Shown here: in pieces, positions 10,793 to 32,197 of the stretch | Layout of the letters: every line of letters starts with the position of its first letter | How positions within the stretch are numbered: position 1 is the stretch's first letter | Source of the DNA: Octopus sinensis | Lineage: Eukaryota | DNA length: 33,525 nucleotides | Reading direction: 5' to 3' | Assembly (NCBI RefSeq): GCF_006345805.1 | Contig: NW_021829929.1 | Span: forward strand, 1-33,525 | Notes under the pieces: generated by a model | What the model was told of the DNA's origin: nothing | What the model saw: the letters and a program-made list of their open reading frames with translations, nothing else | Database searches by the model: none | Made by a program: the position numbers and the translations under genes

Positions 10793-10936
10793 ATGCCAAA
10801 AGAAAGAGGAAAATCTGTATATGACTGTGATATCTGTGGTAAATCATTCTCTGTGAAAGTTAACTTAGCTACTCACAAATGTACTCATACAGGAGAGAAG
10901 CCACATCATTGTGATATCTGTGGTAAATCATATTAA
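10793..10936 (+). CDS. C2H2 zinc-finger copy 1, N-terminal ORF (MPKERGK start, one intact finger, stop inside finger 2)
   Basis: ATG at 10793 is homologous to ATG 14795 of copy 2; the frame ends at GKSY*. Confidence 0.6.
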   Translation: MPKERGKSVYDCDICGKSFSVKVNLATHKCTHTGEKPHHCDICGKSY

Positions 10937-12740
10937 AAATAAACTTAATCTAACTATTAACAGAAATATTCACACACAGCAAAAACTATATCAGTATGAT
11001 ATCTGTGGTAAATCATTCTCTCAAAACTGTCACATAACTAAACACAAACTTACTCATACACGAGAGAAACCATATCATTGTGATATCTGCAGTAAATCAT
11101 TCATTCGCAGAAGTGCTGTAACTGTACATAAACATATTCATACAGGTGAGAAACCATATCACTGTGATATCTGTGGTAAATCATTCTCCATGAGAGTTAA
11201 CTTAGCTAAACACAAACTTACTCATACAGGTGAGAAACCTTATCAGTGTGATATTTGTGATAAATCATTCGCTCGAAGAAGTGCTGTAACTGTACATAAA
11301 CGTATTCATACAGGCGATAAACCATATCATTGTGATATCTGTGGTAAATCATTTTCTAATTGTAGTGGTTTAACATGTCACAGACGTATTCATACAGGAG
11401 AGAAACCATATCACTGTGATATCTGTGGTAAATCATTCTCCATGAAATTTAACTTGGATACACACAAACTTACTCACACTGGGGAGAAACCATATCAGTG
11501 TGATATCTGCGGTAAATCATTCTCTCGAAATGGTGCCTTAGCTAAACACAGACATACTCATACAGGCAAGAAACCTTATCAGTGTGATATCTGTGGTAAA
11601 TTATTTTCTTTGAAAGGTAACTTAACTACACACAAACTTATTCATACAGGTGAGAAACCTTATCAGTGTGATATCTGTGGTAAATCATTCTCTGTGAGAG
11701 TTAACTTAGTGACACACAAAGTTATTCATACAGGGGAGAAACCTTATCAGTGTGATATCTGTGGTAAATCATTCACTCAAAGAAGTACTGTAACTATACA
11801 TAAACGTATTCATACAGGAGAAAAACCATATCACTGTGATATCTGTAGTAGATCATTCTCTCGATGCGGTTACTTAGTTACGCACAAACTTACTCATACA
11901 GGCGACAAACCTTACCAGTGTGATATCTGTGGTAAATCATTCTCTCGAAATGGTGACTTAGCTAAACACAAACATACTCACACTGGCGAGAAACCCCATC
12001 AGTGTGATATCTGTGGTAAATCATTCTCCTTGCAATGTAATTTAAGTAAGCACAGACTTACTCATACAGGGGAGAAACCTTACCAGTGTGATATCTGTGG
12101 TAAATCCTTCTCTCGAAATAGTGACTTAGCTACCCACAAATTTACTCATACAGGAGAAAAGCCATATTCCTGTGATATCTGTGGTAAATCATTCACTCAC
12201 AGAAGTGCTGTAACTGTACACAAACGTACTCATACAGGTGAGAAACCATATCAATGTGATATCTGTGATAAATCATTCTCTCAAAGTGGTGACTTATCCA
12301 CTCACATGTTTATCCATACAGGTGAGAAACCTTACCACTGTGATATCTGTGGGAAATCATTCACTCTAAAGGTTGTCTTAACTAAACACAAACGTACTCA
12401 TACAGGTGAAAAGCCATATCACTGTGATATCTGCAGTAAATCATTCATTCAAAAGGGACAATTAAGTAGACACAAATGTATTCCTTCAGGAATGAAATCA
12501 CATCATTGTGACACCTGTGGTGAATCATTCTCTGTAAAAGCTAAATTAACTAATCACAAACTTACTCATACAGGTGAAAAGCCATATTATTGTGATATCT
12601 GTGGTAAATCATTCACTCAAAAGAACCATTTAAGTAGACACAAAGGTATTCATTCAGGGGTGAAGTCACATCATTGTGACACCTGTGGTGAATCATTCTC
12701 TGAAATAGATCACTTGACCACTCACAGACTCATTCATTAG
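10911..12740 (+). CDS. Poly-C2H2 zinc-finger protein, copy 1 main array (20 fingers, one with His->Pro); possibly a frameshifted pseudogene
   Basis: Repeating CxxC-12-HxxxH fingers with TGEKPY linkers. The frame opens on GTG; the first in-frame ATG is at 11190, inside a finger. Confidence 0.8.
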   Translation: MISVVNHIKNKLNLTINRNIHTQQKLYQYDICGKSFSQNCHITKHKLTHTREKPYHCDICSKSFIRRSAVTVHKHIHTGEKPYHCDICGKSFSMRVNLAKHKLTHTGEKPYQCDICDKSFARRSAVTVHKRIHTGDKPYHCDICGKSFSNCSGLTCHRRIHTGEKPYHCDICGKSFSMKFNLDTHKLTHTGEKPYQCDICGKSFSRNGALAKHRHTHTGKKPYQCDICGKLFSLKGNLTTHKLIHTGEKPYQCDICGKSFSVRVNLVTHKVIHTGEKPYQCDICGKSFTQRSTVTIHKRIHTGEKPYHCDICSRSFSRCGYLVTHKLTHTGDKPYQCDICGKSFSRNGDLAKHKHTHTGEKPHQCDICGKSFSLQCNLSKHRLTHTGEKPYQCDICGKSFSRNSDLATHKFTHTGEKPYSCDICGKSFTHRSAVTVHKRTHTGEKPYQCDICDKSFSQSGDLSTHMFIHTGEKPYHCDICGKSFTLKVVLTKHKRTHTGEKPYHCDICSKSFIQKGQLSRHKCIPSGMKSHHCDTCGESFSVKAKLTNHKLTHTGEKPYYCDICGKSFTQKNHLSRHKGIHSGVKSHHCDTCGESFSEIDHLTTHRLIH

Positions 12741-14704: not shown

Positions 14705-15397
14705 ATGAAATTTCCAGACCATTTTGTTGAAGAAAAAATTACAGAAAGAGGAATGTGTGAGAATCTTGGAGTTTTGTTAGTTTTAGCTGCAGAGATGCCA
14801 AAAGAAAGAGGAAAATCTGTATACGACTGTGATATCTGTGGTAAATCATTCTCCATGAAATTTAACTTGGATACACACAGACTTACTCACACAGGGGAGA
14901 AACCATATCAGTGTGATATCTGCGGTAAAACATTTGCTCGAAGAAGTGCTGTAACTGTACATAAACGTATTCATACAGGCGAGAAACCATTTCAGTGTGA
15001 TATCTGTGGTAAATCATTCTCTCGAGATGGTAACTTAGCTGCTCACAAGGTTATCCATACAGGAGAGAAACCATTTCAGTGTGATATCTGTGGTAAATCA
15101 TTCACTCACAAAAGTGGTGTAATTGTACATAAACGTACTCATACAGGTGAAAAGCCATATCAATGTGATATCTGTGATAAATCATTCTCTCAAAGTGGTG
15201 ACTTATCCACTCACAGATTTATCCATACAGGTGAGAAACCATACAACTGTGATATCTGCAGTAAATCTTTCACTCAAAAGGGACATTTAAGTAGACACAA
15301 AGGTATTCATTCAGGGGTGAAGTCACATCATTGTGACACCTGTGGTGAATCATTCTCTGAAATAGATCACTTGACCACTCACAGACTCATTCATTAG
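14705..15397 (+). CDS. C2H2 zinc-finger protein, copy 2 (7 fingers, intact ORF; family-type start probably ATG 14795)
   Basis: Open frame of 230 aa with 7 C2H2 fingers; flanks homologous to copy 1 (~10272-13073 vs ~14276-15740). Confidence 0.85.
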   Translation: MKFPDHFVEEKITERGMCENLGVLLVLAAEMPKERGKSVYDCDICGKSFSMKFNLDTHRLTHTGEKPYQCDICGKTFARRSAVTVHKRIHTGEKPFQCDICGKSFSRDGNLAAHKVIHTGEKPFQCDICGKSFTHKSGVIVHKRTHTGEKPYQCDICDKSFSQSGDLSTHRFIHTGEKPYNCDICSKSFTQKGHLSRHKGIHSGVKSHHCDTCGESFSEIDHLTTHRLIH

Positions 15398-18462: not shown

Positions 18463-18840
18463 TTACTTAGAAGCCTTCTGGGTTTTCTTGGGCAGAAGAA
18501 CAGCCTGAATGTTGGGAAGAACACCACCCTGGGCGATGGTCACTCCGGACAAAAGTTTGTTCAATTCTTCGTCGTTACGGATGGCCAACTGCAAGTGACG
18601 GGGAATGATTCTCGATTTCTTGTTATCTCTGGCAGCATTTCCTGCCAATTCCAACACCTCAGCAGCCAAATATTCCATCACAGCGGCCAAGTAGACTGGG
18701 GCTCCGGCACCGACACGTTGGGCATAATTTCCCTTACGGAGAAGACGGTGGATACGACCGACAGGGAACTGAAGTCCGGCACGGGACGAACGGGTCTTGC
18801 TCTTTCCCTTTACTTTTCCTCCTTTACCACGTCCAGACAT
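18463..18840 (-). CDS. H2A: Histone H2A (canonical, replication-dependent)
   Basis: MSGRGKGGK...[17 protein letters not shown]...[20 protein letters not shown]; intronless, 3' stem-loop. Confidence 0.99.
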
Positions 18841-19109
18841 ATTTCAAAGTTCGACAGTAGTTCTCAGCAAAGAAGAGAGTTGGCGACTAAATACGAGGGC
18901 GGCTTTTGCCTTTAAATAGCAGTCAGGAGGCTCCAGCAGTCACAAACTGCCGAGCGAAAAAGGAGCGGGTTTATGTCACGTGATTAGACTGCTGTCAAAT
19001 TCCACCAATGAAATTGATTGGCGCGAAACGTCAGCAAGGTGCTCGGCTGAGCCTACTTGTCAATTATAAATAGCGTGGACGAGGGTTGATTAGTAGAGCA
19101 AGTGACATT
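18841..19109. promoter_or_regulatory. Bidirectional H2A/H2B promoter
   Basis: 269 bp. TATTTAAA on - (18911-18918), GTCACGTGA (18975-18983), CCAAT (19005-19009), ATTGG (19017-19021), E2F-like TTTCGCGCCA on - (19019-19028), TATAAATA (19065-19072). Confidence 0.75.
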
Positions 19110-19487
19110 ATGCCACCAGCACCAGCAACTGCTTCGAAAGGAGCCAAGAAGGCTTCCAAGGCCAAGACCTCTCGCCCTGCCGGGGACAAGAAACGTAAGA
19201 AGAAGAGGAAGGAAAGTTATTCCATCTACATCTACAAAGTGATGAAGCAAGTCCACCCGGACACTGGCATCTCCAGCAAAGCTATGTCCATCATGAACAG
19301 TTTTGTCAACGATCTGTTCGAAAGAATAGCTTCTGAATCCAGCCGCTTGGCTCACTACAACAAACGTTCGACCATCAGTAGCCGTGAGGTGCAGACTGCT
19401 GTCCGTCTTCTCCTTCCTGGTGAGTTGGCCAAACACGCCGTCTCTGAGGGTACCAAGGCCGTCACCAAATACACTAGCAGCAAATAA
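19110..19487 (+). CDS. H2B: Histone H2B (125 aa from ATG 19110)
   Basis: [11 protein letters not shown]...[27 protein letters not shown]...TKYTSSK; the track's earlier start is a TTG. Confidence 0.99.
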
Positions 19488-19519
19488 ACCTGCTTCGTTT
19501 CTCTTCATCGAAGAATAAC

Positions 19520-19535
19520 GGTCCTTTTCAGGGCC
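19520..19535 (+). terminator. Histone mRNA 3' stem-loop (H2B)
   Basis: GGTCCTTTTCAGGGCC followed by ACCCA. Confidence 0.95.
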
Positions 19536-20360
19536 ACCCACATTCTCATGAAAGTTAATTCAAATTTTCTGCCGATTTGCGATCCATGTTTTTGGGGTTA
19601 ATTTCTCTAGACTTAGCGCAGGAGACAACAGCCATAGAATGGATTGGGGGAGGAAACATAATTTGTGTACATCGAAGCACAGGTATTTGTATACTCAGGC
19701 GAATATATAAACGAACATGTTTGCAAGTTTTTAATGATACTTTTTTGAAATTTAAGAAATCCCTCCTCCAACTTCAATTTTGTCTTGTCTCCCCCAGCGC
19801 TAACCTTAACCGTAATTACAGGATAGTTTGGATACTTTTGTCCGTATTTTTCCGCATATTTAGAATAAGTTAATTCCTAAAAGATTTCTGTAAAAAATGA
19901 AGGAAACGTGTGGTAGTTTAGAAATGTTGATTGTTATTTTTTTGCCAATTTATTTTGCAGATTCGAATTCACCGTAACCGAAAAAGGGGATTTGCGTCGA
20001 AGAAGTTTAAAAAGTGGGCGGTTTTGGGGTGGAGGCGAGCCCATTCATTTTTAAATATTTTAATCTATAAATTAAAACAAAACAGAAAACAGGCAAATTC
20101 TTGATACTTTTTAATTGCTCTCAGAAAAAGTTAAGGGCTTGTAACTAACAACCGTCTGGTACCTTCCTTATTTTCATATTTTAGTCATCAATAAGCAAGT
20201 AAAATTTCTTTATTATCCATACGGATTAACACAGATGGGGACAATACAATAAGCAAGTAAACAGGCCTAACGGGTGTACGAAGACCTGTGTGTAGTATTA
20301 AATGCGCCATCGTACCTCTTCCGTGTCCCCAAAAGAAGTCGGTGAGTTGGCCCGTATGAA

Positions 20361-21969
20361 TAATAACCGAGTGTGAGAAGAAGGTATTCATTGTGAAATT
20401 TCAATAAAGGTTTTGTCTTGAGGTGAAAACGCGTGCATTCAGCAGCTGGGGTGTTTCTTACCAATACAATAAAACCTGGAGTAGAAACAGTACTATATAT
20501 ATATATATTTACTACTTGAATATGTCATGTTTTCCAATTTTATTAAAATAAACACAAAAGTTCTCGTTTAAAGGCAAAAAGGTAAGCCAAGTTTTCGTTT
20601 TTTTTAGTCTCATACAACATTCTCTGTAATTGTCTGTCTTGTGTCCCGATCTATGTAAGATCGCATGATTATAATAAAGATTTTATACTAATATGAATGC
20701 AAAACACCACGGAGGAATAAGTAAGCTTAAATAACTGACATAGCGACGAGGGACTGACTACTGTACCCTGAATATCGCCTGCTTTTCACGATAATGCGTG
20801 AGTGAAAGCAGGCACTCGCACACACCACATTATCTCTTATACGTAAAGGCGGCGAGCTGGCAGAAACGTTAGCACGCTGGGCGAAATGCGAAGCCGTATT
20901 TCGTCTGCCGTTACGTTCTGGGTTCAAATTCCGCCGAGGTCGACCTAGCCTTTCATCCTTTCGGGGTCGATAAATTAAGTACCAGTTTACACACTGTATT
21001 CAGCAGCTGGGGTGTTTCTCACAATACAATAAAACCCGAAGTAGAAACCACTATATATATTTTCTAATTTTATTAAACAAGAATCACACAAAGTTCTCGT
21101 AAAGGCAAAAGTAAGCCAAGTTTTCGTTTATGTCATATTACAACTAAATTTTAAAGTCTCATAACATTCTTTGTAATTGTCTATCTATGTAAGATCGCAT
21201 GATTATATATATATATATATATATATATGTATAGACATCTTTAAAACGGACTTCAACAGACAAATATTACTATAATGGATAATATAAGCATATAACTACT
21301 TATACACACACATACAATAAATACAGACATATAGCCACATATACACACACACGTGTGTATGTAATCGCGGTGGTGGTCATTTGTGTAGATTTGGTGTGAT
21401 TTCCTTTTTAAAAACAAAATAATGAATAATGCAAGAATATATTTATTTATAAAGTTTAAACAGAACATGGAATGAAATGTTTTAAACTGAACTAATAACC
21501 GACTGAGAATTAAAAAGGTATTCATGTGAAATTTCAATAAAGGTTTTGTCTTGTTGAGGTGAAAACGCGTGCATTCAGCAGCTGGGGTGTTTCTTAACAA
21601 TACAATAAAACCTGGAGTAGAAACAGTATTATATATATATATATTTACTATTTGAATATGTCATGTTTTCCAATTTTATTTTAAAAAAACCCAAAAGTTC
21701 TCGTAAAGGCAAAAGTAAGCCAAGTTTTCGTCATATTACAACTAAATTTTTAAGTCTCAGTCCCTATCAATGTAAGATCGCATGATTATAATAAAGATTT
21801 TATACTAATATGAATGCAAAACATCACGGGGGAATAGTAATCTTTAAATAGCAAACTGATATAGCGACGAGGGACTAACTACTGGACCCTGAATATCGCC
21901 TGCTTTTCACGATAATGTGTGAGTGAAAGCAGGCACTCGCACACACCCCATTACCTTTTATACGTAAAG
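20361..21969 (+). repeat. Spacer repeat in three copies (20361-20848, partial 20998-21207, 21493-21969)
   Basis: Shared blocks such as CAGCAGCTGGGGTGTTTCT and GTAAGATCGCATGATTATA; hairpin at 20777-20813 and 21898-21934. Confidence 0.9.
20848..20996 (+). mobile_element. SINE family B, 5' part with head
   Basis: GGCGGCGAGCTGGCAGAAACGTTAGC...GGTTCAAATTCCGCCGAGGTCGAC. Confidence 0.85.
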
Positions 21970-22400
21970 ATGTATGTACAGTAATACCCTTAATAAGCTT
22001 AACACAGCCACCAAAACAAAAAATCTTATAGCGGTAAAAAGTGTACAGACAGATTACTCGGTGGAGGTAAAAGGTTCACCCTGCACCCGAATTTAAGGAT
22101 TTGCAGTCTGCAAGAGAAATGCGGCCGGAGTTCTGACAGAAGCAACTTTTTTCACTTTTACAACTTTTCCGATTGTCAAAAGCCGTTAAAGGGTGGGTTA
22201 GGGATGCCTTGGCTGTTGATGCACAAGCATGCGCTGAGGTTGAGGCATCTTTGGCTCTACGTGGTTCCCGCTCGCAAAACAGATGTTCCCCAGTTTTCCG
22301 ATTGACCTCTGCACAATGGAACGATTATGCAATAACAAAGCTCATTAACTATATTAGCAGAAACAGCCGTCCCATGGTATGAATATCGGAGGGAAATATG

Positions 22401-22575
22401 GGTACTACTTAAGAAGCGTGGTCCTGGTGCGCGCACTCGTGATTAGTCGATCCTTATTTTGTATGTTTTTTATTTACCTTGTTTAAAAAAATTATTTTGC
22501 ATTATATACTTTGCTAGGTGATCGTAGGATCGACTAGCTAACGCGAGTGAGCGCACCGGGACCTTAAGTAGTACC
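22401..22575. mobile_element. MITE-like family 2, complete
   Basis: GGTACTACTTAAG..GGTCCTGGTGCGCGCACTCG..TAGTCGATCCT / AGGATCGACTA..CGAGTGAGCGCACCGGGACCTTAAGTAGTACC inverted termini. Confidence 0.8.
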
Positions 22576-23100
22576 GCAATATCTACCCCAAAATTAACTC
22601 CACCCGCATTAAGAGACTGCAGATTTTTACCACTGAACAATCGATTATAGTTAGCAAAGTACTAGATTGGTGACCGGGTACTAAACTTAATGTAACCAAA
22701 GCTACTACTACCATAATGCTCCTAAGTGTTACTAGACTTTCTAAAGAGAAATCTACCAGTCTCTGTGAATCAGCAATCGCATCCAAGTGTTTGCACAGAA
22801 TATTCTGCACTAGGGCGATGCAAGTGTCCCGAAATATCCAATTTAACGATAATAAAACGCAGATGGTCTGGGGGCAAATATTTCGTGCATCTGATTCCCT
22901 AACTTTGAGACGTATTTGCCATTTAAATATGGTTAACCCCTAAGGGTGGATGCTACTGTAGTTTGTAGCCCCAGGAGGACACCTCCAGTTGGCTTTAGAC
23001 ACTGTCTGTGCCCTCTCAGTGTTTGCAAAGGCAAGCCACCCTTCCCGTCAACTTATGAAACACACGGGCTTACCCCTAACGTTTCCCCGAGAAGGCGTAA

Positions 23101-23226
23101 CTTCGGTATAAGTACCGGATACATTTCAAGAAAGTGTTTTTATATATATAGGGGTTTAGGGTTGGTGGGAGAAAAAGGTTTATCTTCAGAAATGTAACAA
23201 AGCCACTTACGGTAGTTATACCGAAG
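23101..23226. repeat. Small element with 17-bp inverted termini
   Basis: CTTCGGTATAAGTACCG (23101-23117) vs CGGTAGTTATACCGAAG (23210-23226), one mismatch; interior resembles family 1 MITE. Confidence 0.55.
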
Positions 23227-23427
23227 GATCGCCCCCGAAACACACCACTAAACTAAATATTTCGTAAAGGACCGTACATAGGTGTGAAATAATTATTTTC
23301 GCCAAAAGGGTGTGAACCAAGTTTTCCCACCAAGGGGCACCTTGAAAACCAACAGCTGCAAAATAACATTAAACACAGAAGAAGCACATCGCGATTTAGA
23401 AGAGTTGACTTAAATTAAAAAGTGGGT

Positions 23428-23443
23428 GGCCCTGAAAAGGGCC
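23428..23443 (-). terminator. Histone mRNA 3' stem-loop (H4)
   Basis: GGCCCTTTTCAGGGCC then ACCCA on -. Confidence 0.95.
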
Positions 23444-23475
23444 GGTATGTTTCAAAGAAGCTCAAGGTTCTTAGC

Positions 23476-24477
<1,002 letters not shown>

Positions 24478-28521: not shown

Positions 28522-28709
28522 GGTACTACTGGCTAACAGTGGTTCAGGTGAGCGCACTCGCGCTAGCTAGACATAAGTGGTCGATCCTAAATAATTAAAA
28601 AACTATGTAAATGAATTATTTTTATAAACAAAGGTTAGGGTTAAAAAGTCGTAGGATCGACTACTTACGACTAGCTAGCGCACCGGGACCACTGTTCGCT
28701 AGTAGTACC
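28522..28709. mobile_element. MITE-like family 2, complete
   Basis: GGTACTACT...GTCGATCCT / AGGATCGAC...AGTAGTACC inverted termini. Confidence 0.75.
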
Positions 28710-29382: not shown

Positions 29383-29714
29383 ATGTCTCTTTGAGACATT
29401 TAGAAATTTTATATTTCTATTTACGGTGACCAGTGAATAGATTTCACTGTAAATATATATATTTGTGAAGGCTGGACAGGCACCTCAATCAGCAGATCTC
29501 ACTATCCTGGGCTGATGACCGGTTAAGACCCAGAAGCATGTATGTCCTCAGGTGTGAATCTTGGCTGGACGGGGGTGCTTGCCTCCCCTTCGCAAATATA
29601 AGGACAGAGGAAATGTGTCAAGGCCGACAGGAAGCGTCGATGCTTCCTAGGGCTAAACAGCGGTGGTGTAATTCCCTTACGGGACTGTCACGTTATGTTG
29701 ACAGAATACAACCA
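29383..29714 (+). repeat. Ribozyme-bearing repeat unit, copy 1
   Basis: Colinear with 30044-30375 (offset 661). Confidence 0.9.
29506..29552 (+). ncRNA. Type I hammerhead-like motif, partly degenerate (GAAA->GAAG)
   Basis: Stem I CCTGGG/CTCAGG, CTGATGA, weakened stem II, GAAG, stem III, GTC; predicted cut after 29546. Confidence 0.55.
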
Positions 29715-29799
29715 CTCTATGTAAAACAATTTTGTATATATTACATGTAACAAAAAACAGAAATTAAAATGCAAAATAGTTTGTAAACTTTTCAGGAAG

Positions 29800-30079
29800 T
29801 GAAGAGGACAAATATTGATATTTATCTTGGTTCAAAAAGGCAAAAAAAATTTACCAGGAATTCACCATAGATTTATATAAAAAGAGTTATTATAGTTTTC
29901 CTTTTCTTATCAGAATATACACAAATTTTCTTCTGCGTATTTTTGTATTATATTCCTAGCAAGTATTACTACTGCTTCATTTCCATCAACTGTGAGCTTT
30001 GGTGATATCTGAAGATGCTGCAAACTCCTCCGTAAATCATTCCATGTCTCTTTGAGACATTTAGAAATTCAATATTTCT
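29800..30079 (-). pseudogene. Decayed C2H2 zinc-finger gene leader/5' fragment
   Basis: Reverse complement of 29941-30037 aligns without gaps to 10594-10690 at 72/97 identity (hand count); weaker similarity runs on toward the start of the finger array. The left boundary is approximate. Confidence 0.65.
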
Positions 30080-30400
30080 ATTTACGGTGATCAGTGAATA
30101 GATTTCAATGTAAATATATATATTTTGCGAAGACTAGACAGGCATTTCAACTAGAAGGTTTCACTATCCTGGGCTGATGACGGGTAAGACCCAGAAACAT
30201 GTATGTCCTCAGGTGTGAATCTTGGCTGGTAGGGGATGCTTGCCTCCCCTTCACAAATATAAGGACACAGGAAATGTGTCAAAGCCGACAGGAAGCGTCG
30301 ATGCTTCCTAGGGCTAAACAGCGGTGGTGTAATTCCCTTACGGGACTGTCACGTTATGTTGACAGAATACAACCATTCTATCGCTCCACCACCGCTTATT
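30044..30400 (+). repeat. Ribozyme-bearing repeat unit, copy 2
   Basis: Chain of hairpins around a hammerhead core; 30080-30400 is flanked by an identical 33-bp direct repeat (30047-30079 and 30401-30433). Confidence 0.9.
30160..30219 (+). ncRNA. Type I hammerhead ribozyme motif, intact core
   Basis: Stem I CCTGGG/CTCAGG extended by TTCAC/GTGAA across an internal loop; CTGATGA (30174-30180); stem II GGGT-AAG-ACCC; GAAA; stem III ACAT-GT-ATGT; GUC triplet, predicted cut after 30207. Confidence 0.8.
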
Positions 30401-30780
30401 TCTCTTTGAGACATTTAGAAATTCAATATTTCTGTTTTCAGATATATAGAGAGAAATGGATGGTGATGGAGATGTATGAGGACATACACAAAAGGTAGTG
30501 GTGGTGGGGGAATATTAGTGGTACAGAGGATAGAGGGGGATGTTTCATAGAAGTGTGAGGGGCTTTTGAATGTGTGTGTGTGTGTGTTACTATATCTTTG
30601 CCTTGAGACTGTGTGATAGTTGTGGGTGTCACTGCCATGCAAGCAATGTCCATCGCCAACCTGACACAAAAACATGTCAGGTCACAGGGAAAATATCTTA
30701 GTTTGAAATAGGTGAAGGTTGGCCACAGGAGGGACATCAGTACAGAAAACTCACCTCAAAAATTTCATCATGGAAGAATG

Positions 30781-31563: not shown

Positions 31564-31566
31564 AAA

Positions 31567-31710
31567 TTTTATAGAAGGAGCTTCTACAGGACTAGAACTG
31601 TTTCATTCAAATGAAATCATCTGGAAGCTTTGTGATTGTTGACACAAAGCTTCCTGATGATTTCATTTGAATGAAACAGTTCTAGTCCTGTAGAAGCTCC
31701 TTCTATAAAA
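31567..31710. repeat. 68-bp near-perfect palindrome with 8-nt loop
   Basis: 31567-31634 pairs with 31643-31710 with a single T.T mismatch (31622/31655). Confidence 0.95.
31648..31698 (+). ncRNA. Type I hammerhead-like motif in the palindrome right arm
   Basis: Stem I AGCTTC/GAAGCT; CTGATGA; stem II TTC-ATTT-GAA with U.U at 10.1:11.1; GAAA; stem III ACAG/CTGT; GUA triplet, predicted cut after 31692. Confidence 0.7.
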
Positions 31711-31835
31711 TAAATTAATTTACTCTGCTATGTATTGAGTACCTTATTTACTGTGGTTAACCCCGACTCAACCCGGGACCTACATATATATATATATATA
31801 TACTTTATTTAAAGCAGCAGAAAATTCAACAAAAC

Positions 31836-31873: not shown

Positions 31874-32023
31874 TTTTTACTACATATATATATATACACA
31901 CACGCACACACACATATATATATATATATGACTAGCTAGCGCGGAAAAGATCCTATATATGTGTATATATATATACACACACAAGCACATATATATATAT
32001 ACACACATATATAAGATCTTTTC

Positions 32024-32197
32024 CGCGCTAGCTAGTCATGACTAGTTGATCCTTATTTTGTGTTTTTGTGTTTTATTTACTTTGTTTAACAAAAATTATT
32101 CATTTTGTGTCTTATTTACTTTGCTAGGTAGCCGTTGTAGGATCGACAAATGACGACTAGCAAGTGCGCGCACCGGAACCACAGTTCGCTAGTAGTA
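32024..32197. mobile_element. MITE-like family 2, left end replaced
   Basis: Interior and right terminus match the copies at 22401 and 28522. Confidence 0.7.

What the first reader, a model, noticed from the sequence alone, without database searches (positions are those of the whole stretch)
30160..30219. Complete type I hammerhead ribozyme motif in an unclassified repeat
Seen: all conserved core residues (C3UGAUGA9 at 30174-30180, G12AAA at 30194-30197, GUC triplet at 30205-30207). All three helices can pair: stem I CCUGGG/CUCAGG plus UUCAC/GUGAA beyond a UAU/U internal loop, stem II GGGU/ACCC, stem III ACAU/AUGU. The 10.1:11.1 pair is a C.A mismatch. Known: type I hammerheads use a stem I bulge to dock on loop II, and animal genomic hammerheads mostly occur in Penelope-like elements and retrozymes. 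Inferred: a self-cleaving RNA that gene annotation would miss.
Basis: partly seen in the sequence, partly recalled or inferred. Interest (0 to 1): 0.9.

Follow-up and report, generated by a model that had tools for sequence, protein, structure and literature searches.

The report
Hammerhead ribozyme in a retrozyme repeat
The motif is a real hammerhead-type self-cleaving RNA motif carried by a 355-base non-coding mobile repeat present in thousands of copies in this probably octopus genome; this kind of element is already known from other animals, so it is a new example rather than a new principle.

Summary
All invariant hammerhead core residues and three helices are at 30160-30219 (+), with the predicted cut after C30207. 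A loose descriptor finds such a motif 0.002 times per shuffled window.

The motif sits in a 355-nt non-coding repeat with about 2,500 first-look candidates and 207 exact intact cores in the 2.72-Gb genome. The window holds two copies. Copy 2 (30044-30433) has a core equal to the family consensus. Copy 1 (29383-29720) has a degraded core.

The family looks like a metazoan non-LTR retrozyme moved by Penelope-like elements (PLEs):
- The consensus circle is very self-paired (z = -9.1).
- Helix I and the long rod show compensatory changes.
- Helix III is a palindrome, stable only as a dimer.
- Insertions are 1.x-mers with 3' ends at two fixed sites, a 36-42-nt tail, inverted twin copies, 8-14-bp target duplications and frequent (TA)n targets.
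- A young, abundant PLE family in this genome also ends in (TA)n.

Caveats:
- The 10.1:11.1 pair is C.A in 34 of 39 copies.
- No Rfam hammerhead model reports the motif.
- Cleavage, circular RNA and mobilisation by PLEs are inferred, not shown.

Verdict: a new member of a known kind, of moderate interest.

The parts
30044..30399 (+). Copy 2: one full 355-nt repeat unit (u1-u355), 95% identical to the family consensus.
30398..30433 (+). Tail: the first 36 nt of a second unit (u1-36). It consists of two hairpins and ends where most family copies end (u36-42).
   Evidence: hairpins in the consensus fold
30160..30219 (+). Hammerhead motif of copy 2, including the distal part of helix I.
30174..30180 (+). 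Core C3-U4-G5-A6-U7-G8-A9.
   Evidence: invariant in 36 of 39 copies
30181..30193 (+). Helix II with loop 2: C10.1, GGGU, AAG, ACCC, A11.1. Positions 10.1:11.1 form a C.A mismatch. This copy lacks one U of the consensus loop.
30194..30206 (+). G12-A13-A14 followed by helix III (A15.1-C-A / U-G-U16.1, loop UGUA). The consensus is the palindrome ACAUGCAUGU; here a C>U change gives two G.U pairs in the dimer form.
30207..30208 (+). Predicted cleavage site: after C17 (30207) and before C1.1 (30208).
   Evidence: Follows from the hammerhead architecture. Not tested experimentally.
29383..29720 (+). Copy 1: unit u1-u337, from a different subfamily, 93% identical to copy 2. It ends at the family's second common 3' end.
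29498..29558 (+). Degraded hammerhead of copy 1. A15.1 is changed to G (GAAG at 29533-29536) and G10.2 to C (29520). It is probably inactive.
29721..30043 (+). 323-nt spacer between the two copies. It does not belong to the family. It is made of two local sequences (B 29721-29894, A 29892-30043) that flank a single unit in the opposite order on scaffold C27.

Best explanation
The motif is the type I hammerhead of a 355-nt non-coding, non-autonomous retroelement: a metazoan non-LTR retrozyme.

Proposed life cycle:
1. Multimeric transcripts of tandem master copies are cut after GUC (unit position 164; window 30207/30208).
2. Two neighbouring motifs probably act together as a double hammerhead, because helix III is a palindrome that is stable only between two copies.
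3. The 355-nt product, with 5'-OH and 2',3'-cyclic phosphate ends, is closed by a host RtcB-type ligase into a compact, highly base-paired circle.
4. Circles or multimers are copied in trans by the reverse transcriptase/GIY-YIG endonuclease of resident Penelope-like elements.
5. Reverse transcription starts at one of two internal sites (u39, just after two hairpins, or u337), at TA-rich or (TA)n targets.
6. This gives 1.x-unit insertions with variable 5' ends, a 36-42-nt tail, inverted twin copies and 8-14-bp target duplications.

Shown here: the motif, the family, its fold, the covariation, the insertion architecture, and the presence of young PLEs that insert in (TA)n.
Inferred: cleavage, dimer action, circularisation, and mobilisation by PLEs.

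The window's copy 2 is one such dead-on-arrival 1.1-unit insertion with a core identical to the consensus. At most it could cut a read-through host transcript. Copy 1 has lost its core.
For: Motif and chance:
- Sequence at the stated coordinates.
- Descriptor: 0.002 hits per shuffled window.

Family:
- 2,471 first-look candidates; the copies listed are mostly 87-97% identical.
- 355-nt consensus; mean divergence from consensus 6%.
- 207 exact intact cores in the genome, 0 for the reversed control.
- 33 of 39 copies keep all invariant residues.

Structure:
- The consensus circle folds at -141.4 kcal/mol against -90.0 +/- 5.6 for shuffles, z = -9.1.
- 93% of cells are paired in the hammerhead-plus-rod structure, against 20-53% when partners are slid.
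- Pair 2.1-1.1: GC 27, AU 9, GU 3, none broken. Rod pair 25-91: AU 20, GC 16, GU 3.
- The hammerhead fold lies within 1.5-2.7 kcal/mol of the MFE.
- The helix III hairpin has no stability alone, but the palindrome dimer gives -14.7 kcal/mol for the consensus and -7.8 for the window copy.

Insertion architecture in 39 insertions:
- 30 of the 3' ends fall at u36-42 and 20 at u332-342.
- 15 insertions have 3' ends on both sides.
- 17 abut (TA)n of at least 4 repeats.
- Clear 8-14-bp target duplications are present.
These are the PLE hallmarks described in PMC8557442 and PMC11167929.

Resident PLEs:
- 4,846 GIY-YIG candidates, with intact frames of 781-883 aa.
- Copies of the main family are 97-99% identical and end in ...ACAAAT(AT)n.

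Not a classical SINE: no tRNA, 5S or 7SL match in the unit.

Precedents (PMC7229834):
- 350-390-nt mussel retrozymes.
- An axolotl hammerhead with a U.U mismatch at the base of helix II that cleaves mainly as a dimer.
- Circularisation by RtcB.
Against: - No Rfam hammerhead model reports the motif at E<=10, for the window copy, a consensus copy or a U10.1-A11.1 copy.
- The family is absent from the 65 best RF00163 matches in the genome, which come from another family.
- C10.1.A11.1 replaces the usual G-C, so the G10.1 purine of the A9/G10.1 metal site is missing (established hammerhead biochemistry, from my own knowledge).
- Helices II and III never vary at master level, so they have no covariation support.
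- Conservation among young retro-copies is not by itself evidence of selection. Zero variable sites in the 15 unpaired core positions, against about 1.5 expected, is not significant.
- No sequence similarity between the unit and 19 sampled PLE loci.
- Only 3 of 39 sampled insertions carry two same-strand hammerheads.
- 5' ends are not enriched at the cleavage site.
- There are no expression data.
Confidence: 0.6

Rival explanations
1. The motif is a relic. It descends from a hammerhead, for example one in a PLE pseudo-LTR, but the family-wide C.A at 10.1:11.1 and the 3-bp helix III have abolished useful self-cleavage. The family spreads as an ordinary uncleaved RNA template of PLE enzymes.
For: - Rfam models are silent.
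- C.A in 34 of 39 copies.
- Helix III is unstable in a single motif.
- Hammerhead mutations did not affect PLE insertion in vitro, and no reads ending at the cut site were found in Anolis (PMC11167929).
- Insertion 5' ends are not enriched at u165.
Against: - All invariant core residues are identical in the masters of the three subfamilies.
- The only subfamily-level changes inside the 47-nt motif are a compensatory pair (2.1-1.1) and loop 2.
- The helix III palindrome is kept.
- The axolotl hammerhead with a U.U at the same place still cleaves, 22% in 1 h as a monomer and far better as a dimer (PMC7229834).
Confidence: 0.27
2. The motif is a chance resemblance. The core words and helices arose by accident in a repeat that has nothing to do with ribozymes.
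For: - The fold energy of the 71-nt segment is no better than shuffles (z = -0.2).
- The loose descriptor also hits a palindromic repeat at 31654-31692.
Against: - 0.002 hits expected per window.
- The element has the size, self-pairing, insertion architecture and PLE co-occurrence typical of hammerhead-bearing retroelements.
- Helix I shows covariation.
Confidence: 0.02
3. The element is a transcribed satellite of the newt satellite-2 type, whose main form is long tandem arrays. The dispersed copies would be by-products.
For: - Unit size and a dimer-type hammerhead resemble the newt and axolotl repeats (PMC7229834).
- Short arrays exist: two units plus a tail at L049, and 1.7 units at L007.
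Against: - None of the 39 sampled insertions exceeds about 2.1 units.
- Most have target duplications and defined 3' ends, as retro-copies do.
- Sampling was limited to the best 40 candidates per search, and long arrays may be collapsed in the assembly.
Confidence: 0.06

Closest known systems
Metazoan non-LTR retrozymes, especially those of the mussel Mytilus galloprovincialis (Cervera & de la Pena 2020, PMC7229834)
   Same: - A non-coding unit of 350-390 nt in a mollusc, carrying one type I hammerhead.
- GC below 50% (45.9% here).
- Thousands of copies.
- A highly self-paired predicted circle.
- Co-occurrence with autonomous PLEs.
- Target duplications longer than 4 bp.
   Different: - Here most sampled loci are dispersed 1.1-1.9-unit insertions rather than longer tandem arrays.
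- The 10.1:11.1 pair is C.A.
- Expression as circular RNA is not shown.
- Sequence relatedness to the mussel elements could not be tested.
Newt satellite 2 and the axolotl HHR_Amex1/Amex2 retrozymes
   Same: - Helix III is very short and capped by a palindromic loop, so the active form is expected to be a double hammerhead.
- Amex2 also has a mismatch (U.U) at the base of helix II.
- Unit size is 330-350 nt.
   Different: - The host is an invertebrate.
- There are no large arrays in the sample.
- The mismatch is C.A rather than U.U.
- Helix III has 3 bp rather than 1-2.
Penelope-like elements with minimal hammerheads in their pseudo-LTRs (Cervera & de la Pena 2014; Craig et al. 2021; Frangieh et al. 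2024)
   Same: - The insertion signature matches: a partial tandem, an adjacent inverted 5'-truncated copy, a 30-40-nt tail, two reverse-transcription start sites, and a bias for microsatellite targets.
- The resident 781-aa PLE family also ends in (TA)n.
   Different: - The element has no ORF.
- No sequence similarity to 19 sampled PLE loci.
- The hammerhead has full-length helices I and II, unlike the PLE's own minimal motif.
- The distance between the two 3' ends is about 57 nt, not 30-40.
Plant LTR retrozymes
   Same: Non-autonomous retroelements that use hammerheads to make circular RNA.
   Different: Plant retrozymes have type III hammerheads inside LTRs, PBS/PPT sequences, 4-bp target duplications and 600-1000-nt circles. 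None of these is present here.

Membership tests
Hammerhead ribozyme, type I | Invariant core: C3 U4 G5 A6 N7 G8 A9, G12 A13 A14, A15.1-U16.1, H17. | tested here: met
   All are present at 30174-30207. 33 of 39 family copies keep them.
Hammerhead ribozyme, type I | Three helices around the core, with helix I open and helices II and III closed by loops. | tested here: met
   Helix I has 6 bp plus a 5-bp distal part, helix II 4 bp and helix III 3 bp. The hammerhead fold is -13.4 kcal/mol against an MFE of -14.9. Helix III is unstable on its own.
Hammerhead ribozyme, type I | A Watson-Crick 10.1-11.1 pair, normally G-C. | tested here: not met
   C.A in the window copy and in 34 of 39 copies. It is U-A in 5 copies, through C>T change at a CpG.
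Hammerhead ribozyme, type I | A match to the curated covariance models (Rfam RF00163 and the other hammerhead families). | tested here: not met
   No hammerhead hit at the gathering score or at E<=10. RF00163 does find a different family in the same genome.
Hammerhead ribozyme, type I | Helices supported by compensatory change. | tested here: inconclusive
   Helix I is supported: pair 2.1-1.1 is GC 27, AU 9, GU 3, and a distal pair is AU 28, GC 4. Helices II and III do not vary. The changes are subfamily-level, so they represent few independent events.
Hammerhead ribozyme, type I | Site-specific self-cleavage after H17, and a loop 2/helix I tertiary contact. | not testable with these tools
   This needs transcription and cleavage assays. 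A UAU/U internal loop 6 bp from the core is in the usual place for the contact.
Metazoan non-LTR retrozyme | A non-coding unit of about 170-400 nt with one type I hammerhead, GC below 50%, and no LTR, PBS or PPT. | tested here: met
   The consensus is 355 nt with GC 45.9%. There is no RNA-gene match and no ORF beyond a spurious 99-aa frame. PBS and PPT were not searched for explicitly.
Metazoan non-LTR retrozyme | Occurrence as head-to-tail tandem repeats. | tested here: inconclusive
   Insertions span about 0.5-2.1 units, and most full ones are 1.1-1.9 units. 3 of 39 carry two same-strand hammerheads. Only the best 40 candidates per search were seen.
Metazoan non-LTR retrozyme | A highly self-paired monomer circle. 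| tested here: met
   Circular MFE is -141.4 kcal/mol against -90.0 +/- 5.6 for 200 shuffles, z = -9.1.
Metazoan non-LTR retrozyme | Abundant linear and circular RNA of unit length in tissues. | not testable with these tools
   No expression data are available here.
Non-autonomous derivative of Penelope-like elements | The PLE insertion signature: partial tandem, inverted 5'-truncated neighbour, 30-40-nt tail. | tested here: met
   15 of 39 insertions have 3' ends on both sides. The tail is u1-36 to u1-42 at 30 of the 54 outer 3' ends. Upstream copies are variably 5'-truncated. The definition comes from PMC8557442 and PMC11167929.
Non-autonomous derivative of Penelope-like elements | Sequence shared with an autonomous PLE (pseudo-LTR or 3' end). 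| tested here: not met
   blastn with word size 7 found no match between the unit and 19 PLE loci. Only a few of the genome's PLE families were sampled.
Non-autonomous derivative of Penelope-like elements | The same target preference as the resident PLEs. | tested here: met
   17 of 39 insertions abut (TA)n. The young 781-aa PLE family ends in ...ACAAAT(AT)n at four loci.
SINE (derived from tRNA, 5S or 7SL) | A small-RNA-derived head with an internal pol III promoter. | tested here: not met
   There is no tRNA, 5S or 7SL match in 29900-30600 at E<=10.

The most novel reading that the evidence does not exclude
This may be an active cephalopod retrozyme family with two unusual properties.

First, its hammerhead works without the canonical G10.1-C11.1 pair. 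It would use a C.A (perhaps a protonated A+.C wobble) and obligatory double-hammerhead pairing through a 10-nt palindromic helix III.

Second, its insertions give unusually clean genomic evidence that PLE enzymes mobilise retrozyme RNA in trans in an invertebrate. They show two fixed reverse-transcription start sites about 57 nt apart, twin-primed inverted copies, and (TA)n targeting shared with a young resident PLE. All this occurs without any shared sequence between the retrozyme and the PLE.
Probability: 0.3. Interest if true: 0.55.

Novelty: new member of a known kind. Interest (0 to 1): 0.4.

Why it matters
Hammerhead-bearing retrozymes are a source of abundant small circular RNAs in animals. 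How they move is still argued; a 2026 preprint proposes that they derive from Penelope-like elements.

This family adds a case in what is probably an octopus. The 2026 repeat annotation of Octopus vulgaris that I checked lists active Penelope elements but does not mention ribozymes.

The family also shows that standard Rfam scans miss whole families of such motifs when the 10.1-11.1 pair is non-canonical.

Its insertion sites carry a full set of PLE signatures that could be used to test trans-mobilisation.

For genome annotation, the practical message is that this 355-nt "unclassified repeat" should be labelled as a retrozyme-like element.

Tried and rejected
- Rfam scans of the window, of an 81-nt slice, of a consensus copy and of a U10.1-A11.1 copy gave no hammerhead match. 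So the C.A alone does not explain the silence of the models.
- RNAalifold on 39 copies predicts a non-hammerhead pairing of the core and supports only the rod. I therefore tested the hammerhead structure explicitly.
- I looked for an autonomous partner by sequence. There is no similarity between the unit and 19 PLE loci, or between the unit and the second hammerhead family.
- I tested whether the single unit on scaffold C27, flanked by the window's spacer halves in permuted order, is a chimera of copy 2 and copy 1 joined at the cleavage site. That would have been direct evidence for cleavage and circularisation. It is not: it matches copy 2 along its whole length.
- I tested whether insertion 5' ends pile up at the cleavage site (u165). 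They do not.
- A scan of metagenome contigs for the family core found only an unrelated minimal hammerhead.
- A literature search for the core sequence found nothing.
- I looked for target duplications around copy 1, copy 2 and the composite. None is clear.

Full report
**1. The observation**

- CUGAUGA is at 30174-30180, GAAA at 30194-30197 and GUC at 30205-30207.
- Helix I is CCUGGG/CUCAGG, with one G.U pair.
- A distal helix UUCAC/GUGAA lies beyond a UAU/U internal loop.
- Helix II is GGGU/ACCC.
- Positions 10.1:11.1 are C.A.

The one error concerns helix III. ACAU/AUGU would leave a two-base loop. The feasible helix is 3 bp (ACA/UGU) with a UGUA loop.

I wrote a descriptor that asks for the core, helix I of at least 5 bp, helix II of at least 3 bp and helix III of at least 2 bp, and tolerates a 10.1/11.1 mismatch. 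It finds this site. It gave 2 hits in 1000 dinucleotide-preserving shuffles of the whole window on both strands, or 0.002 per window.

The stand-alone fold of the segment is not unusually stable (z = -0.2). The hammerhead fold lies only 1.5 kcal/mol above the minimum free energy.

**2. Context in the window**

The motif lies in a repeat. The window has two copies in the same orientation, 661 nt apart.
- Copy 2 is 30044-30399, followed by the first 36 nt of another unit (30398-30433).
- Copy 1 is 29383-29720. It is 93% identical to copy 2 and ends at unit position 337.
- Copy 1's hammerhead is damaged. GAAA has become GAAG (A15.1>G), and G10.2 has become C.
- Copy 2 differs from the family consensus inside the motif only in loop 2 (one U missing) and loop 3 (C>U).

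The rest of the window is animal sequence. It holds a histone H2A/H2B/H4/H3 cluster with Rfam histone 3' stem-loops, C2H2 zinc-finger arrays and (TA)n/(CA)n tracts.

The assembly has 2,719,151,902 bases in 13,516 records, about 30 of them very large. This fits the 2.72-Gb chromosome-level Octopus sinensis assembly cited in PMC12564688. That identification is an inference, not a result.

**3. The family**

- A search of the window's own genome with the 357-nt unit gave 2,471 first-look candidates. Among the 40 scored there were 104 matches, the full-length ones mostly 87-97% identical.
- Twenty full-length copies give a 355-nt consensus with GC 45.9%.
- Forty-three copies differ from it by 6% on average, and by 12.5% at CpG sites.
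- An exact pattern for the family's hammerhead core occurs 207 times in the genome, against 0 for the reversed control. At 6-12% divergence this fits a few thousand copies.
- Of 39 aligned copies, 33 keep CUGANGA, GAAA, U16.1 and H17.
- No tRNA, 5S, 7SL or other RNA family matches the unit, and it has no meaningful ORF.

**4. RNA structure**

Opened at the predicted cleavage site and folded as a circle, the consensus monomer gives -141.4 kcal/mol. Two hundred dinucleotide shuffles give -90.0 +/- 5.6 (z = -9.1). The fold is a compact branched rod in which helix I of the hammerhead continues into a long helix.

On the 39-copy alignment A2, the hammerhead-plus-rod structure has 93% of cells paired. 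When the 3' partners are slid by 1-3 columns, 20-53% are paired.

Subfamily differences include compensatory changes.
- The first pair of helix I (2.1-1.1) is G-C in 27 copies, A-U in 9 and G.U in 3, and is never broken.
- A rod pair is A-U in 20 copies, G-C in 16 and G.U in 3.
- A distal helix I pair is A-U in 28 copies and G-C in 4.

Inside the 47-nt motif, the only sites that differ between subfamilies are that compensatory pair and two loop 2 positions. These are few evolutionary events. Helices II and III do not vary, so they are neither supported nor contradicted.

Helix III (consensus ACAUGCAUGU) is a perfect palindrome. As a hairpin it has no predicted stability. As a homodimer it gives -14.7 kcal/mol for the consensus and -7.8 for the window copy. 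This is the arrangement of the newt and axolotl hammerheads, which cleave efficiently only as dimers (PMC7229834).

**5. What argues against an active ribozyme**

- Rfam's hammerhead models give no match at the gathering score.
- They also give none at E<=10 on 701 nt, on 81 nt, on a consensus copy, or on a copy in which CpG decay has made 10.1-11.1 a U-A pair.
- RF00163 run over the genome finds a different hammerhead family, with scores up to 48 bits, and none of this family among its 65 listed matches.
- C.A at 10.1:11.1 is the state of 34 of 39 copies and of all three subfamilies. G10.1 normally contributes to a metal site with the A9 phosphate (my own knowledge of hammerhead biochemistry).
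- There is a published precedent for a mismatch at this position. The axolotl HHR_Amex2 has a U.U at the base of helix II, cleaves 22% in an hour as a monomer and much better as a dimer.

I therefore consider weak, dimer-dependent cleavage the most likely behaviour. It remains untested.

**6. How the element moves**

I mapped 39 insertions in the fetched loci onto unit coordinates.
- Outer 3' ends fall at two places: u36-42 of a following unit (30 ends, mode u39) and u332-342 (20 ends, mode u337).
- 5' ends are scattered.
- Fifteen insertions have a 3' end on both sides, that is, an inverted 5'-truncated copy next to a direct one.
- Seventeen abut (TA)n of at least four repeats.
- Where the target is not a microsatellite, 8-14-bp target duplications bracket the whole composite, for example at L014, L015, L016, L023, L028 and L048.
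- The u1-38 tail is made of two perfect hairpins.

Partial tandems, an adjacent inverted truncated copy, a 30-40-nt tail that reflects two internal reverse-transcription start sites, and a microsatellite bias are the published hallmarks of Penelope-like elements (PMC8557442; PMC11167929).

The same genome has at least 4,846 GIY-YIG candidates. 147 of the 150 scored pass the Pfam cut-off, and many sit in open frames of 781-883 aa. Copies of the main 781-aa family are 97-99% identical, form pseudo-LTR tandems with a minimal hammerhead, and end ...TTTTTTACAAAT directly on (AT)n.

So a young PLE with the same target habit is present. I found no sequence shared between the unit and 19 PLE loci, so the partner is not identified.

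**7. Comparison with what is known**

The element fits the metazoan non-LTR retrozymes of Cervera & de la Pena (PMC7229834). The shared features are:
- a 170-400-nt non-coding unit with a type I hammerhead;
- low GC;
- target duplications above 4 bp;
- a self-paired circle;
- co-resident PLEs.

The mussel units (350-390 nt) are the nearest described case. A 2026 preprint argues from vertebrates that such retrozymes are non-autonomous PLE derivatives (10.64898/2026.07.22.740005). The insertion anatomy here points the same way in an invertebrate.

I found no mention of hammerheads or retrozymes in the 2026 Octopus vulgaris repeat annotation (PMC13282606), and no paper holding the core sequence.

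The finding is therefore a new member of a known kind. Its modest peculiarities are the C.A pair, invisibility to Rfam, and mostly 1.x-unit dispersed copies.

**8. An unexplained detail**

Scaffold C27 (10808638-10809302) carries a single unit that is 97% identical to copy 2 and shares copy 2's private changes along its whole length.
- It is flanked by the two halves of the window's 323-nt spacer in the order A-unit-B. The window has unit-B-A-unit.
- Both unit/flank junctions are the same in the two places. The B|A junction overlaps by ATA.
- Paralogous A-like and B-like sequences in the C27 zinc-finger cluster are in the order A then B.
- This suggests that C27 shows a simple insertion and that the window is rearranged. 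Possible causes are tandem duplication with conversion, a circular intermediate, or an assembly problem in this unplaced contig and its identical twin C6399. I could not decide between them.
- The unit is not a chimera joined at the cleavage site, so it gives no evidence for ribozyme processing.

**9. Verdict**

- I put about 0.6 on a family-level functional, probably dimer-dependent, hammerhead within a PLE-mobilised retrozyme.
- I put about 0.27 on an inactive relic in such an element.
- Chance and a satellite-type main form share the small remainder.

Noticed in passing
window 31654-31692 (+), within 31566-31711: A second hit of my loose hammerhead descriptor: CUGAUGA, GAAA, GUA, a 6-bp helix I, U.U at 10.1/11.1 and a 3-bp AU-rich helix II. 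It lies inside a roughly 150-bp palindromic MITE-like repeat (69-nt arms, 99% complementary), with 855 first-look candidates in the genome. It is probably a by-product of the palindrome.
   Followed up: partly
L031-L042, e.g. G000:C16:25146363-25146839 (L036/L037): A second hammerhead family that Rfam does recognise (RF00163 up to 48 bits; GUAC-CUGAAGAG-ACCC..GGGU-C-GAAA-CAUGUG-UC-GUAC). It sits in non-coding repeats, with a tandem period of about 431 nt at one locus. It looks like a second retrozyme-like family and is unrelated in sequence to the 355-nt unit.
   Followed up: partly
window 29383-30437 versus G000:C27:10808638-10809302 (L003): There is a circular-permutation relation between the two places. 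The window has unit-B-A-unit, and C27 has A-unit-B with the same two unit/flank junctions. The C27 unit carries copy 2's private mutations. The origin is unexplained.
   Followed up: partly
L065-L071 (e.g. G000:C1:207473000-207481400): A very young Penelope-like element family. Its ORF is 781 aa, copies are 97-99% identical, and it forms pseudo-LTR tandems with a period of about 5.9 kb. A minimal hammerhead (CUGACGA..GAAAUCGGUC) lies in the pseudo-LTR, and the 3' end joins (AT)n.
   Followed up: partly
window 18463-24477: A histone cluster: H2A 18463-18840 (-), H2B 19086-19487 (+), H4 23476-23787 (-), H3 24067-24477 (+). Only two histone 3' stem-loops pass the Rfam gathering score (19515-19560 + after H2B, and 23403-23448 - after H4). 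None was reported for H2A or H3.
   Followed up: no
window 10911-12740 and 14705-15397 (+): Long open frames of tandem C2H2 zinc fingers (609 and 230 aa). Related arrays surround the C27 locus, so the window probably belongs to a zinc-finger gene cluster.
   Followed up: no
window 28559-28707 and 32024-32197: Direct repeats of about 150 bp, 82-93% identical and 3.47-3.49 kb apart, bracket the stretch that holds both retrozyme copies. A 48-nt inverted repeat with the same CGCGCTAGCTAG word lies at 31928-32039. This may be another repeat family.
   Followed up: no
L082-L084 (metagenome contigs Ga0131853_10002319, Ga0123352_10008748, Ga0123354_10008387): An unrelated minimal hammerhead with a U10.1-A11.1 pair (GCUC-CUGAUGA-UGGGCGUAUGCCCCA-GAAA-CAUGUA-GAGC) occurs in three near-identical contigs of 38% GC. 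These are probably eukaryotic DNA within the metagenomes.
   Followed up: no
G000:C6399:3078-4132 (-): Contig C6399 repeats the window's retrozyme region base for base (100% over the unit and the spacer). C6400 and C6399 are probably duplicate or haplotype contigs.
   Followed up: no
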